From the NCBI RefSeq assembly GCF_030144855.1, contig NC_082712.1:96286001-96350000 (forward strand): a DNA stretch of 64,000 nucleotides, read 5' to 3'. Below, one piece after another: positions 36,986 to 39,987 of this stretch. The notes under the pieces are model-generated. The model made no database searches. It saw nothing but the letters and a program-made list of their open reading frames with translations, and had not been told where the DNA came from. The translations under genes were made by a program, and so were the position numbers. This stretch comes from Hypanus sabinus. Taxonomy: Eukaryota. Each line of letters opens with the position of its first letter. The first letter of the stretch is position 1.

Positions 36986-39010
36986 ACTGGACCTTGTGCT
37001 AAGTGTGCTGGACTCTGTGGTTGGTGAGCTAGACTCTGTAGTCGATGTGCTGGACCCTGTGTTCGATGTGCTGGACCATGTGGTCGATGAGCTGGACCAC
37101 GTGGTCGATGAGCTGGACCATGTGGCCAATGGGATGGACCCTGTGGTTGATGGGATGGACCCTGTGGCCAGTGCGCTGGACCCTGTGGTCAGTGCGCTGG
37201 ACTCTGTGGTCGGTGAGCTGGACTCTGTGGTCGGTGAGCTGGACTCTGTGGTCGGTGAGCTGGACTCTGTGGTCAATGTGTTGTTCAGTGAACTGGTCTC
37301 TGAGGATTGTGTACTTGTCACTGTTGTTGATGTGCCGGTGGAGATGAGTTTGGTTGGTGTATTGATTATTGTTGATGGGTTGGTCACCGTGGGAGACACA
37401 CTGGCGGCTGCAGTAGACACAGAGCCTAGTGTAGTGCACAATGTGCTGAAGAATGTGGTGGGTGCACTGGCCGGTGTGGAGGACTGTGTGATTGGAATAC
37501 AGATCATCGTACAGGTCACTGGACTCATGCTGGTCACTGTACTCGACTCTGTGGTTACTGTGCTAAGTGGTATGGTGGGATATGTGCACAATGTGGTTAA
37601 TATAATGGAAGCTGTGGTGGGTATGTTGGTCACTGTGGTGGATGCACTGGTCGGTGTACTGGTCTCTGTGGTCGGTGTTGTGGTTGTTGTACTGTTCAAT
37701 GTGGTTAGTGTACTGGTTGGTGTACTGGTCTCTGCAGTCTGTGTACTGGTCACTGTGGTCAGTGTACTGGTTGGTGTACTGGTCACTGCAGTCTGTGTAC
37801 TCGTCATTGTGGTCAATGTGCTGGTCTGTGTACTGGTCACTGTGGGGTCTGTGTACTGGTCACTGTGGGGTCTGTGTACTGGTCACTGTGGTCAACCTGC
37901 TAGTCAGTGTACTGGTCACTGTGGTCAATGTGCTGGTCAGTGTACTGGTCACTGTGGGGTCTGTGTGCTGGTCACTGTGGTCAGTGTACTGGTTGGTGTA
38001 CTGGTCACTGCAGTCTGTGTACTGGTCATTGTGGTCAATGTGCTGGTCTGTGTACTGGTCACTGTGGGGTCTGTGTACTGGTCACTGTGGGGTCTGTGTA
38101 CTGGTCACTGTGGTCAACCTGCTAGTCGGTGTACTGGTCATTGTGGTCAATGTGCTGGTCTGTGTACTGGTCACTGTGGGGTCTGTGTACTGGTCACTGT
38201 GGGGTCTGTGTACTGGTCACTGTGGTCAACCTGCTAGTCGGTGTACTGGTCACTGTGGTCAGTGTACTGGTTGGTGTACTGGTCACTGCAGTCTGTGTAC
38301 TCGTCATTGTGGTCAATGTGCTGGTCTGTGTACTGGTCACTGTGGGGTCTGTGTACTGGTCACTGTGGTCAACCTGCTAGTCAGTGTACTGGTCACTGTG
38401 GTCAATGTGCTGGTCAGTGTACTGGTCACTGTGGTCAGTGTACTGGTTGGTGTACTGGTCTCTGCAGTCTGTGTACTGGTCATTGTGGTCAATGTGCTGG
38501 TCTGTGTACTGGTCACTGTGGGGTCTGTGTACTGGTCACTGTGGTCAACCTGCTAGTCGGTGTACTGGTCATTGTGGTCAATGTGCTGGTCTGTGTACTG
38601 GTCACTGTGGGGTCTCTGTACTGGTCACTGTGGGGTCTGTGTACTGGTCACTGTGGTCAACCTGCTAGTCGGTGTACTGGTCATTGTGGTCAATGTGCTG
38701 GTCTGTGTACTGGTCACTGTGGTCAACCTGCTAGTCGGTGTACTGGTCATTGGGGTCAATGTACTGGTTAGTAATTTGGGATTATGCAACATTATGAAAC
38801 CAGTGAAGAGGAGAGAGGGAACAACGTGAGGGCACTTCTGAATAGAGAGCTTCAGCTTGGTTATGGGCAGAATTAGTCTGGGTTGGTTAATGGGGAGACA
38901 GTGGGCTTCATTAGGCAGAGTACTGGGGTCTATGGGTCTGAGAATATCGACAGTGAAAGGATGCAGTTACGAAAAGAGGAGAGTGAGCCCATTGGATGGA
39001 GGTGGGTATT
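36986..39010 (-). pseudogene. Decayed 5' portion of the ancestral mucin exon (pseudo-exon), copy 1
   Basis: PTS repeats with frameshifting ~20-bp units (gtggggtctgtgtactggtc). Phase-1 acceptor tatttatacag| at 39011, in frame with the repeats but with TAA at 38967-38969. The 3' part (ORF 36968..37840) runs into a stop inside the CR1 insert. Confidence 0.7.
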
Positions 39011-39987
39011 CTGTATAAATACACAAACATTTTAAAGATTAGCTTTATTTGTCAAATGTACATTGAAACATAAGTGAAATGCGTTACTAATGGGAGCAGC
39101 CTGCTTGTGTCGCCACGCTCTGTTGAGAATGTAGTGTTGGTCAGGATGAACTACAGTCTGCAAATCAGTGAAATTGAATAAATAAAGGACAGTGGATAGA
39201 CACACCAATTCTCTTTGCTCTTGCCATGTGTTTGAAAGAGTTTGGAGATGGCCAATTTGTGAGATTTTGTGAACTCTGAACGAATTCTTGCTCTGGGATA
39301 TTTTATTCAGAGTAATTGAATGTGGACACAAGGACTTTCAGCTGATGATCTGCTGAACCTGAGCCCATACTCAGATGAGTAGCTATTTATTATGTAAAGT
39401 GTCAGGCTTGCCAGAGAAGTAATCTGTAATCTCGTTGGATTCAGCGTCTGGGTCACCTGTTGTACCTGGTTTGAACCACTTAGAGTAGAAAGGAACAAAG
39501 GCACGATGCCAGGGAGCAGAGACCATATTACATTGCTGGTTGTCGCCCTGGACCAAAGCCAGTATGAAGGTGACTCAGGTAGTGTCAGGTGACCTTTAGT
39601 CAATTTGAGGGAGATGGATTAGTTGAACTGATAAGCAACATCAGAAGAGTCAGGAGCTTCAAATACGAGGCAGCGATAACTTTCCAGCAAACAGAGAACG
39701 ATCAACACGGATGAGGAGGACCCCACAGACACGTGGATATCGGGACTCTGAGGAATGCCTGGTCAGCGGAGACTGCTTTCCCGAGTAATACATTTTCTCT
39801 TCATTGATTGCTCATGGAGGGTCAGGGAATCCTAATGAGTATGCGCACAGTTAATTAGTTTGTGAACCGGCATGCTTTTTAGTTGAGGCAATAACGGTTA
39901 CTTATCAGTAGATACAGATTCTCTCTGTTTTCTCTGATCATTATTACAAAAATATAGATTCTTATGACAATGGCATGCCCACAACGC

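What the first reader, a model, noticed from the sequence alone, without database searches (positions are those of the whole stretch)
36986..39015. Intronised fossil of the ancestral exon 5' end, with its old acceptor intact (possible poison or secreted-isoform switch)
Seen: an acceptor tatttatacag| at 39011 (55114 in the duplicate) opens a phase-1 frame EYPPPSNGLTLLFS*LHPFTVD...KLLTSTLTPMTST. This frame is in register with the PTS repeats 240 nt later and has one TAA shared by both copies. The repeats here have expanded in frameshifting ~20-bp units, unlike the frame-preserving arrays of the live exons. Inference: this was the original exon start, released from selection after the CR1 insertion and before the duplication. 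If still used, it would stop after 14 codons and give an NMD target or a short TM-less secreted mucin.
Basis: partly seen in the sequence, partly recalled or inferred. Interest (0 to 1): 0.7.

Follow-up and report, generated by a model that had tools for sequence, protein, structure and literature searches.

The report
Dead front end of mucin exon
In a stingray gut-type membrane mucin gene, the front 2 kb of a giant sugar-carrying exon has been disabled and is probably now skipped, and its unused splice site matches the one that normally opens the gene's EGF-like exon; this is a neat but fairly ordinary piece of gene decay, and whether the old site is still used could not be tested.

Summary
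The sequence facts hold. An acceptor (tatttatacag|, first exon base 39010; 55113 in the duplicate) opens a phase-1 frame that stops at one shared TAA after 14 codons and is in register with the first PTS repeats. The array behind it carries a frame-breaking 23-bp unit, 10 copies in copy A and 3 in copy B. The live arrays have none.

The reading is partly supported. The stretch is former coding sequence cut off by a 428-bp CR1 tail. PTS frames of 290 and 517 codons run straight into that tail.

The 231-nt unique part is not more ORF-like than chance (P about 0.18).

The 13-nt acceptor core is identical to the acceptor of the gene's own EGF-like exon (10921), with 0.03 matches expected in the window. 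In the only relative found, a Hemitrygon akajei mucin-3A-like protein, the same "VSSS" exon end joins directly to that EGF exon. So the old acceptor most likely began as an EGF-exon acceptor. It may mark a fusion of a small mucin unit with a larger PTS exon.

No RNA data could be obtained. Present use (poison site or secreted isoform) is untested.

The parts
39011..39021 (-). Old acceptor core tatttatacag (AG at 39012-39011; first exon base 39010). With the next 2 nt it is identical to the live EGF-exon acceptor.
38967..38969 (-). TAA stop, 14 codons behind the old acceptor, shared with copy B
38780..39010 (-). 231-nt single-copy stretch between the acceptor and the first PTS repeat. It has 1 stop in the acceptor frame and 5 and 4 in the other two. 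No protein family matches.
   Evidence: single-copy depth
37627..38779 (-). Decayed 33-bp-type PTS array with ten 23-bp frame-breaking units, built from a higher-order unit 33-33-23-23 (112 bp)
36971..37840 (-). Still-open 290-codon PTS frame holding the last 33-bp units, the Cys island and the 21-bp repeats. It runs into the CR1 and stops there (TGA at 36970-36968).
37365..37540 (-). Cys island ([16 protein letters not shown]...FFSTLC). Its DNA is identical to the island of the live exon X copies except for a 5-nt cluster.
36558..36985 (-). 5'-truncated CR1 LINE tail (ELGLFSLE..RGDLIEVYKMMRGID...; 3' microsatellite ttctatg). It lies in the same orientation as the gene. Its length of about 428 nt (2 mod 3) keeps the PTS frames on its two sides in register.
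   Evidence: (depth about 600,000; loose ends at 36560)
36551..36552 (-). AG of the presumed current acceptor (ttctatgtttctattgaccacag|GG). It is in frame with the phase-1 donor at 42101 and opens the 15.2-kb exon.
   Evidence: use inferred, not shown
42101..42450 (-). Exon end: Cys island plus tail ...[13 protein letters not shown] and donor TCAG|GTAAAC (phase 1), the partner of both acceptors
52963..55124 (-). Duplicate (copy B) of the whole relic. It has the same acceptor (first exon base 55113), the same TAA and three 23-bp units (69 nt in total, so acceptor frame equals final frame). A 517-codon open PTS frame (54496-52943) runs into the same CR1.
10808..10931 (-). Live EGF-like exon (E KNPCQNGGTWDEDDDECDCPDPYEGTYCERVDDEIEV) with its acceptor tatttatacag|AA. 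This is the reference for the old acceptor.

Best explanation
**Setting.** The window carries a stingray MUC3/12/17-like membrane mucin gene on the minus strand.

**What the stretch is.** Stretch 39010-36987, and its 16-kb-unit duplicate 55113-52963, is the disabled former front part of a giant PTS exon.

**How it was cut off.** A 5'-truncated CR1 tail landed inside the 21-bp repeat array. It put a stop into the reading frame. Its T-rich 3' microsatellite, together with a host ACCACAG, offers a new in-frame acceptor at 36551.

**Inferred current splicing.** Splicing from the phase-1 donor at 42101 (58211 in the duplicate) most likely now goes to that new site. The 2.4 kb in front of the CR1 would then be intronic and free to decay. 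The decay seen is one TAA plus the spread of a 23-bp frame-breaking repeat variant in non-3n higher-order units.

**Origin of the old acceptor.** The acceptor at 39011 is a genuine family acceptor. Its 13-nt core is the same as that of the gene's EGF-like exon. In the paralog P0001, that EGF exon follows the same 'VSSS' exon end directly. The short upstream PTS exon (59073-58211) plus this acceptor therefore look like the remains of a small P0001-like unit (PTS exon, then EGF-SEA-TM). Its EGF exon body appears to have been replaced by sequence leading into a larger PTS exon.

**Shown:** the sequence anatomy, the shared lesions, the acceptor identity and the paralog's junction. **Inferred:** which acceptor is used today, the fusion history and the order of events.
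For: 1. **The CR1 split a continuous PTS array.** PTS-frame ORFs of 290 codons (copy A) and 517 codons (copy B) run directly into the CR1. 21-bp repeats lie on both sides of it. A 428-nt insert keeps the two sides in frame.
2. **The CR1 is a high-copy element.** Its 3' end is at about 36560 (depth about 600,000 and loose ends). It is present at the same place in both copies.
3. **Downstream exons keep their frame.** Donor 42101 plus acceptor 36551 gives ...VSSS-G-PSTPTTES in frame, with 5104 and 3537 open codons behind.
4. **23-bp units are confined to the relic arrays.** Copy A has 10 and copy B has 3, amplified in 112- and 89-bp units. The live array has none.
5. **The acceptor core is shared.** TATTTATACAGAA occurs only at 10919, 39009 and 55112, with 0.03 matches expected. 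A local alignment around the two splice sites has z = 4.2 and lies on the same diagonal.
6. **The paralog shows the normal junction.** P0001 (mucin-3A-like, Hemitrygon akajei; SEA 1.5e-13) reads ...[13 protein letters not shown]|EKNPCQNGG... Its N-terminal part is 87-90% identical to the exon end at 42101/58211.
7. **Family architecture.** The MUC3/12/17 family has a PTS exon followed by EGF-SEA-EGF-TM (PMC13643018).
Against: - **No RNA evidence.** The runs found are DNA-like short contigs, and no splice joint of either kind was seen. Use of the CR1 acceptor and disuse of the old one are inferences.
- **The acceptor match is a small island.** Outside the 13-nt core the flanks of the two acceptors are not significantly similar. 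Behind the acceptor only 12 of 30 nt match the EGF exon (p about 0.06), and nothing matches further on. The EGF link rests on a 13-nt island plus context.
- **The unique part may never have been coding.** The openness of the 231-nt unique part is within chance, so it may never have been translated.
- **Long ORFs are weak evidence here.** The antisense strand of the 15-kb array is also open for 5002 codons.
- **No gene model.** No annotated model of the giant exons was found for comparison.
Confidence: 0.55

Rival explanations
1. One reading: 39011 was simply the original acceptor of the PTS exon, and the 231 nt behind it were its original coding start. On this view the identity with the EGF-exon acceptor means nothing.
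For: - The acceptor frame is in register with the first repeats and has one stop, against 5 and 4 in the other frames.
- In copy B the acceptor frame equals the final 517-codon frame.
- Flanks of the 13-mer are not alignable to the EGF acceptor region.
Against: - A 13/13 match to the acceptor of the exon that normally follows this donor is very unlikely by chance (0.03 expected in the whole window at up to 1 mismatch).
- The ORF-likeness is within chance (P 0.18).
- The 62 residues behind the TAA have no Pfam or Atlas relative.
Confidence: 0.1
2. The 39011 acceptor never served the PTS exon. It is the last trace of a dead EGF exon of an upstream small mucin gene, and the 231 nt are plain non-coding DNA. 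The PTS array behind it belonged to a separate downstream gene (or is a dead segmental copy of the exon X array). That array became joined to the upstream exons only when the CR1 tail supplied an acceptor.
For: - The openness of the unique part is within chance and nothing there looks protein-like.
- The relic array and Cys island resemble those of exon X at 76-82% and 100%.
- The upstream exon X has the full layout of a small P0001-like PTS exon, including an N-terminal unique part.
Against: - No trace of a promoter, signal-peptide exon, or SEA or TM exon lies between 42100 and 36550.
- The perfect 13-nt core amid unalignable flanks suggests the acceptor stayed under selection after the EGF body was lost.
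- The register with the array in both copies fits former use.
Confidence: 0.2
3. The old acceptor is still used. It competes with the CR1-born acceptor and yields transcripts that stop after 14 codons. These would be either NMD substrates (a poison 3' splice site, twice per gene) or a short secreted TM-less mucin. This is compatible with the best explanation and adds present function to it.
For: - The acceptor core (-11 to +2) is identical to a presumably working acceptor of the same gene.
- A yUnAy branch-point candidate (gctaatc) lies about 25 nt upstream.
- It is transcribed before the CR1 acceptor.
- It is intact in both copies, although the 241 nt behind it diverged 2.5% against 1.1% for the intron.
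Against: - No RNA run holds the locus, so no junction evidence exists.
- The two copies are only about 1% apart, so intactness in both proves no constraint.
Confidence: 0.15
4. The frameshifts are assembly errors in a hard repeat, and the whole stretch from 39010 is still one live exon apart from the CR1.
For: Repeat arrays are error-prone, and independent read support for the 23-bp units could not be extracted (one search shows only sparse short contigs over 37694-38688).
Against: - The 23-bp unit is one exact sequence variant (a 10-nt deletion, not a homopolymer slip). It recurs 9 times identically, is organised in higher-order units, and is present in both copies.
- The TAA and the CR1 stop are in unique sequence. 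A contig from an independent run covers 38855-39059 with a single difference, at 38949 and not in the TAA.
Confidence: 0.05

Closest known systems
MUC3A/MUC3B/MUC12/MUC17-type transmembrane mucin genes (human 7q22 cluster)
   Same: Tandem family. Each gene has a huge PTS domain followed by EGF-like, SEA, EGF-like, TM and a short tail. P0001 shows PTS tail, EGF, SEA and TM. The window shows PTS exons followed by an EGF-like exon in phase 1.
   Different: In mammals the PTS domain is described as a single exon (PMC13643018). Here it is spread over at least three phase-1 exons made by an intragenic 16-kb duplication and, probably, a fusion. The SEA and TM exons of this gene are not in the window.
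Transposable-element exonisation that supplies a new 3' splice site (Alu, LINE and CR1 tails as polypyrimidine tracts)
   Same: A retroelement in sense orientation brings a T-rich tract next to a host AG and so creates a candidate acceptor. The former exon part upstream becomes intron.
   Different: The element did not add a new exon. It split a giant exon and would have moved its 5' border 2.4 kb downstream. Use of the site is not shown.
Poison exons and unproductive alternative 3' splice sites coupled to NMD; soluble splice forms of membrane mucins
   Same: An apparently competent acceptor leads to a stop after 14 codons, upstream of further exon junctions.
   Different: There is no evidence of use, of conservation beyond a 1%-old duplicate, or of regulation. 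The site is a leftover rather than a demonstrably selected switch.
Exon relics (pseudo-exons) in fast-evolving repeat genes; the scan's own stingray cases of decayed mucin-stalk exons
   Same: Recognisable former coding repeats with stops and frameshifts lie next to a live gene part.
   Different: Decay here proceeds by amplification of a single frame-breaking repeat variant. The relic's Cys island is still kept identical to the live one by gene conversion.

Membership tests
MUC3/12/17-type transmembrane mucin gene (host gene) | Very large Pro/Thr/Ser-rich tandem-repeat domain | tested here: met
   Open PTS frames of 5104 and 3537 codons with 21- and 33-bp units
MUC3/12/17-type transmembrane mucin gene (host gene) | EGF-like domain directly after the PTS domain | tested here: inconclusive
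   The exon at 10808-10920 is 52% identical to the EGF part of P0001 (E 4.6e-7). Pfam EGF is below the cut-off (E 0.012, 16.3 bits against 21.5).
MUC3/12/17-type transmembrane mucin gene (host gene) | SEA domain and transmembrane helix | tested here: not met
   Not found in the window by tblastn with P0001, so presumably beyond its end. The paralog P0001 has SEA (1.5e-13) and a TM stretch.
Exon relic / pseudo-exon | Homology to live coding sequence of the same gene | tested here: met
   The array is 76-82% identical to the live 33-bp arrays. The Cys island is identical over about 170 nt.
Exon relic / pseudo-exon | Disabling lesions and loss of frame constraint | tested here: met
   A shared TAA and 10 and 3 units of 23 bp amplified in 112- and 89-bp units. 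The live array has 264 of 266 spacings in 3n.
Exon relic / pseudo-exon | Absent from mature mRNA | not testable with these tools
   No RNA run holds the locus; the laid runs are DNA-like contigs.
Acceptor of the family's EGF-like exon (origin of the old acceptor) | Sequence identity with a known EGF-exon acceptor, same phase, same split Glu codon | tested here: met
   13/13 identical to 10919-10931, with 0.03 matches expected in the window. Both are phase 1 and give G|AA = Glu.
Acceptor of the family's EGF-like exon (origin of the old acceptor) | Partner donor is the one that joins to the EGF exon in a relative | tested here: met
   P0001 reads ...[13 protein letters not shown]|EKNPCQNGG, and the same tail and donor lie at 42101 and 58211.
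Acceptor of the family's EGF-like exon (origin of the old acceptor) | EGF coding sequence behind the acceptor | tested here: not met
   Only E..P..NG.T (5 of 12 residues; 12 of 30 nt, p about 0.06) resembles the EGF start. There is no similarity further on and no Cys pattern.
Poison exon / AS-NMD switch | Junction reads into the site, raised when NMD is blocked | not testable with these tools
   No RNA data.
Poison exon / AS-NMD switch | Premature stop upstream of a later exon junction | tested here: met
   The TAA at 38969-38967 lies far upstream of the 21318>10920 junction. This follows from sequence only.
CR1-derived splice acceptor | The element is a CR1 LINE tail in sense orientation | tested here: met
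   The translation ELGLFSLE..RGDLIEVYKMMRGID..FFTQRVV matches the CR1 ORF2 C-terminus (recognised from my own knowledge). It has a 3' ttctatg microsatellite and a depth of about 600,000 in DNA runs.

The most novel reading that the evidence does not exclude
The intact EGF-type acceptor is still recognised. Each 16-kb unit of the gene would then carry an unproductive 3' splice site that competes with the CR1-born one. Output of the giant membrane mucin would be set by acceptor choice at two places, with by-products that are NMD substrates or a short secreted mucin ending ...VSSS-EYPPPSNGLTLLFS. Behind this would lie a fusion of two tandem MUC3-like genes whose joint sits within a few bases of the EGF-exon acceptor.
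Probability: 0.15. Interest if true: 0.6.

Novelty: new member of a known kind. Interest (0 to 1): 0.33.

Why it matters
Mucin genes are among the fastest-changing and worst-annotated vertebrate genes. This locus shows, in one place, how a giant PTS exon can be remodelled:
- a retroelement splits it;
- the cut-off part decays by spread of a frame-breaking repeat variant;
- gene conversion still keeps its Cys island identical to the live copy;
- the leftover acceptor points to exon shuffling or gene fusion within a MUC3-like cluster.

If the old acceptor were still in use, it would be a natural example of a relic splice site throttling a very large gene. As it stands, the finding is a well-documented but ordinary case of exon decay in a non-model species.

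Tried and rejected
- **RNA evidence.** Two run searches (two searches found the tool busy) gave no RNA holder. Their joints come from high-copy repeats (the CR1, and an element at about 39030-39075). There is therefore no verdict on expression or junction use.
- **Annotated gene models.** Searches with the ends of the 3537- and 5104-codon frames found nothing. An exhaustive HMMER search with the Cys island plus tail found only P0001. The DNA of the P0001 locus could not be fetched because the file was too large.
- **EGF remnant behind the acceptor.** No significant similarity exists beyond the 13-mer.
- **Unique part.** The 62 residues behind the TAA have no Pfam family and no Atlas look-alike.
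- **Intron homology.** 42100-39011 against the intron before the live EGF exon gave only two 70% patches. They lie in transposon-rich DNA and are judged uninformative.
- **Small intron around the CR1.** I tested whether the open 290/517-codon part is a separate live exon with the CR1 spliced out. The only phase-compatible GT (CCA|GTCTTA) is very weak and AAG|GTCCAG is out of phase, so this was rejected (reading).
- **Second acceptor-like site.** 38838 (ctctctattcag|AA) resembles the EGF acceptor region at 69% (E 5.7). I treat this as chance.
- **Possible EGF2-like hit.** The hit at 11993-11955 has no Cys pattern and was rejected.
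Full report
**Setting.** The window is vertebrate DNA. The one protein relative found is "mucin-3A-like [Hemitrygon akajei]" (P0001), and earlier notes of the scan call this genome a stingray. The gene lies on the minus strand.

Reading downstream (falling coordinates), the layout is:
- A short PTS exon, here "exon X". Its probable acceptor is near 59073 and its donor TCAG|GTAAAC is at 58211.
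- A 3.1-kb intron.
- The relic, copy B (55113-52963).
- A CR1 tail.
- A 10.6-kb open PTS frame ending at a donor at 42101.
- A 3.1-kb intron.
- The relic, copy A (39010-36987).
- The same CR1 tail (36985-36558).
- A 15.2-kb open PTS frame ending at a donor near 21318.
- A 10.4-kb transposon-rich intron.
- An EGF-like exon at 10920-10808.

The two 16-kb units are a recent tandem duplication. Between them, intron identity is 98.9%, the exon tail 99.75%, the 241 nt behind the old acceptor 97.5% and the CR1 97.9%.

**Check of the observation.**
- The acceptor ...gtgtatttatacag| has its AG at 39012-39011 (55115-55114 in copy B).
- With the phase-1 donor, the frame reads E-YPPPSNGLTLLFS-TAA-LHPFTVD...KLLTSTLTPMTSTPTS in both copies. 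It has one shared TAA and runs in register into the first PTS repeats.
- The frame-breaking units are one exact 23-bp variant, ACCAGTACACAGACCCCACAGTG. This is a 33-bp unit that lost AGCACATTGA.
- Copy A has ten of these units plus one 44-bp unit. They are arranged as a 33-33-23-23 higher-order unit of 112 bp.
- Copy B has three, in a 33-33-23 unit of 89 bp. The variant occurs nowhere else in the window.
- In the 9-kb live 33-bp array, 264 of 266 unit spacings are multiples of three. The two others add up to one.
- In copy B the three units sum to 69 nt. The acceptor frame is therefore the same as the 517-codon frame that runs to the CR1.

One caution applies. One stop in 77 codons is not beyond chance: P(<=1) is 0.18 by dinucleotide shuffles and 0.17 in windows of the real intron.

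**What the stretch is.** The part from 38780 down to 36987 is clearly former coding sequence.
- It consists of PTS repeats 76-82% identical to the live arrays.
- It holds a Cys island (SPVTCTMIC...FFSTLC) whose DNA is identical over about 170 nt to the island of the live exon ends.
- It holds 21-bp repeats that continue on the other side of the CR1.
- PTS-frame ORFs of 290 codons (copy A) and 517 codons (copy B) run straight into the element and stop at its first bases.

The element is a 5'-truncated CR1 tail in the same orientation as the gene.
- Its translation reads ELGLFSLE..RGDLIEVYKMMRGID..FFTQRVV, which I recognise from my own knowledge as the CR1 ORF2 C-terminus.
- It has a ttctatg microsatellite at its 3' end.
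- DNA runs give a summed depth of about 600,000 over it, with loose ends at 36560 that mark its 3' border.
- An insert of 428 nt (2 mod 3) leaves the PTS frames on its two sides in register.
- Directly behind it, ttctatgtttctattgaccacag|GG gives an acceptor at 36551. With the phase-1 donor at 42101 this reads ...VSSS-G-PSTPTTES and opens 5104 codons. The same holds in copy B.

It is inference, not observation, that this is the acceptor now in use. No RNA run holds the locus, and the four runs laid were DNA-like short contigs.

**The new point: where the old acceptor comes from.** P0001 is a 393-residue protein with an EGF-like part, a SEA domain (Pfam 1.5e-13) and a TM stretch.
- Its first 117 residues are the Cys island plus the tail ...[13 protein letters not shown]. 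They are 87-90% identical to the exon end at 58211/42101.
- They are followed at once by EKNPCQNGGIWDGEQCDC....
- So in the family this donor normally joins to the EGF-like exon. This is the usual MUC3/12/17 layout (PMC13643018).

The window's own EGF-like exon starts tatttatacag|AA AAA AAT CCA TGC... at 10920.
- Its 13-nt core TATTTATACAGAA is identical to the relic's acceptor.
- The word occurs only at 10919, 39009 and 55112, all on the minus strand. The expected number in the window is 0.03, even allowing one mismatch.
- A local alignment around the two splice sites has z = 4.2 and lies on the same diagonal.
- Both sites are phase 1 and complete the same Glu codon.

The match has limits.
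- Behind the acceptor the resemblance is faint: E.YPPPSNG.T against E.KNPCQNG.T, or 12 of 30 nt, p about 0.06.
- It then disappears. The flanks outside the core are not significantly similar.
- The 62 residues behind the TAA match no Pfam family and no Atlas cluster.

I read this as follows. The old acceptor began as an EGF-exon acceptor of a small P0001-like unit, consisting of exon X followed by EGF-SEA-TM. The EGF exon body was then lost or replaced a few to about 25 bases behind the splice site, which led into a larger PTS exon. A perfect 13-nt core amid unalignable flanks suggests the site stayed in use after that event. It does not prove it.

**Mechanism proposed.**
1. An EGF-type acceptor served a fused PTS exon (inferred).
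2. A CR1 tail was inserted into the 21-bp array. It truncated the frame and offered an in-frame acceptor (anatomy shown, use inferred).
3. The 2.4 kb in front of the CR1 became intronic. It then acquired a TAA and a 10-nt deletion variant of the repeat. That variant spread in non-3n blocks (shown).
4. The 16-kb unit was duplicated. This followed steps 2 and 3, because the CR1, the TAA and the 23-bp variant are shared (shown).
5. Copy A expanded the 23-bp units further (shown).

The order of step 2 relative to the first lesions in step 3 cannot be told.

**Rivals.**
- The acceptor may never have served the PTS exon. This remains possible because the unique 231 nt are not demonstrably coding.
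- Present use as a poison site or secreted-isoform switch is compatible with the sequence. The core equals a presumably working acceptor, a branch-point candidate lies upstream, and the site is transcribed first. It is wholly untested.
- Assembly error is unlikely. The 23-bp unit is an exact, recurrent, higher-order-organised variant. An independent contig also covers 38855-39059 with one difference, outside the TAA.

**Verdict.** This is an exon relic next to a probable CR1-born acceptor in a MUC3-like mucin gene, with an unexpected EGF-exon origin of the leftover splice site. It is a new member of known kinds of event and of moderate to low general interest. The interest would rise only if RNA data showed that the old site is still used.

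Noticed in passing
window 37365-37540, 53300-53475, 58385-58560, 42275-42450 (minus strand): The ~170-nt Cys island is 100% identical in all four copies, relic and live. The exception is a 5-nt cluster in relic A (GSVSTAAAS against GSESSSAAS), and that cluster matches the paralog P0001 exactly. The flanks are unrelated. This looks like ongoing gene conversion that includes the dead copies.
   Followed up: partly
window 39030-39075 (+ strand): A very high-copy element (AGCTTTATTTGTCAAATGTACATTGAAACATAAGTGAAATGC...) starts about 20 nt upstream of the old acceptor. Summed depth is about 20,000 in DNA runs. Contigs from other copies join 39054 to 40220, which suggests a 1.17-kb nested insertion at 39055-40219.
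   Followed up: partly
window 21334-36342 (+ strand): The antisense strand of the 15-kb PTS array is open for 5002 codons. Very long ORFs here are a by-product of repeat composition and are weak evidence of coding by themselves.
   Followed up: no
window 59073-58211 and 51610-51580 (minus strand): Exon X seems to begin at ctcttttcctttgctttattcaag|TTCTTGG with a non-repetitive N-terminal part (LGGFSDSQLSKTQTKYK...). Its [25 protein letters not shown] segment recurs at about 51600, inside the 10.6-kb exon.
   Followed up: partly
window 36558-39015 against 39011-42100: Between the two 16-kb copies, the relic's unique part and the CR1 differ about twice as much (15 of 672, 2.2%) as the intron (35 of 3090, 1.1%). 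Part of the relic next to the array differs by over 8%. Possible causes are uneven gene conversion or repeat-associated mutation.
   Followed up: no
window 38796 and 38814: Contigs of a run labelled as another organism (X4) lack one base at each of these places in the unique part. These would be further frame-breaking differences, but whether that run is another species or another copy is unknown.
   Followed up: no
window 7000-10063 (minus strand) and 14999-15466 (+): Retroelement ORFs (endonuclease/RT pieces, a gag-like zinc-knuckle protein of 341 aa, and a LINE C-terminal piece) fill the 10.4-kb intron before the EGF-like exon and the DNA behind it. There is also a 22-bp tandem array at 4952-5331.
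   Followed up: no
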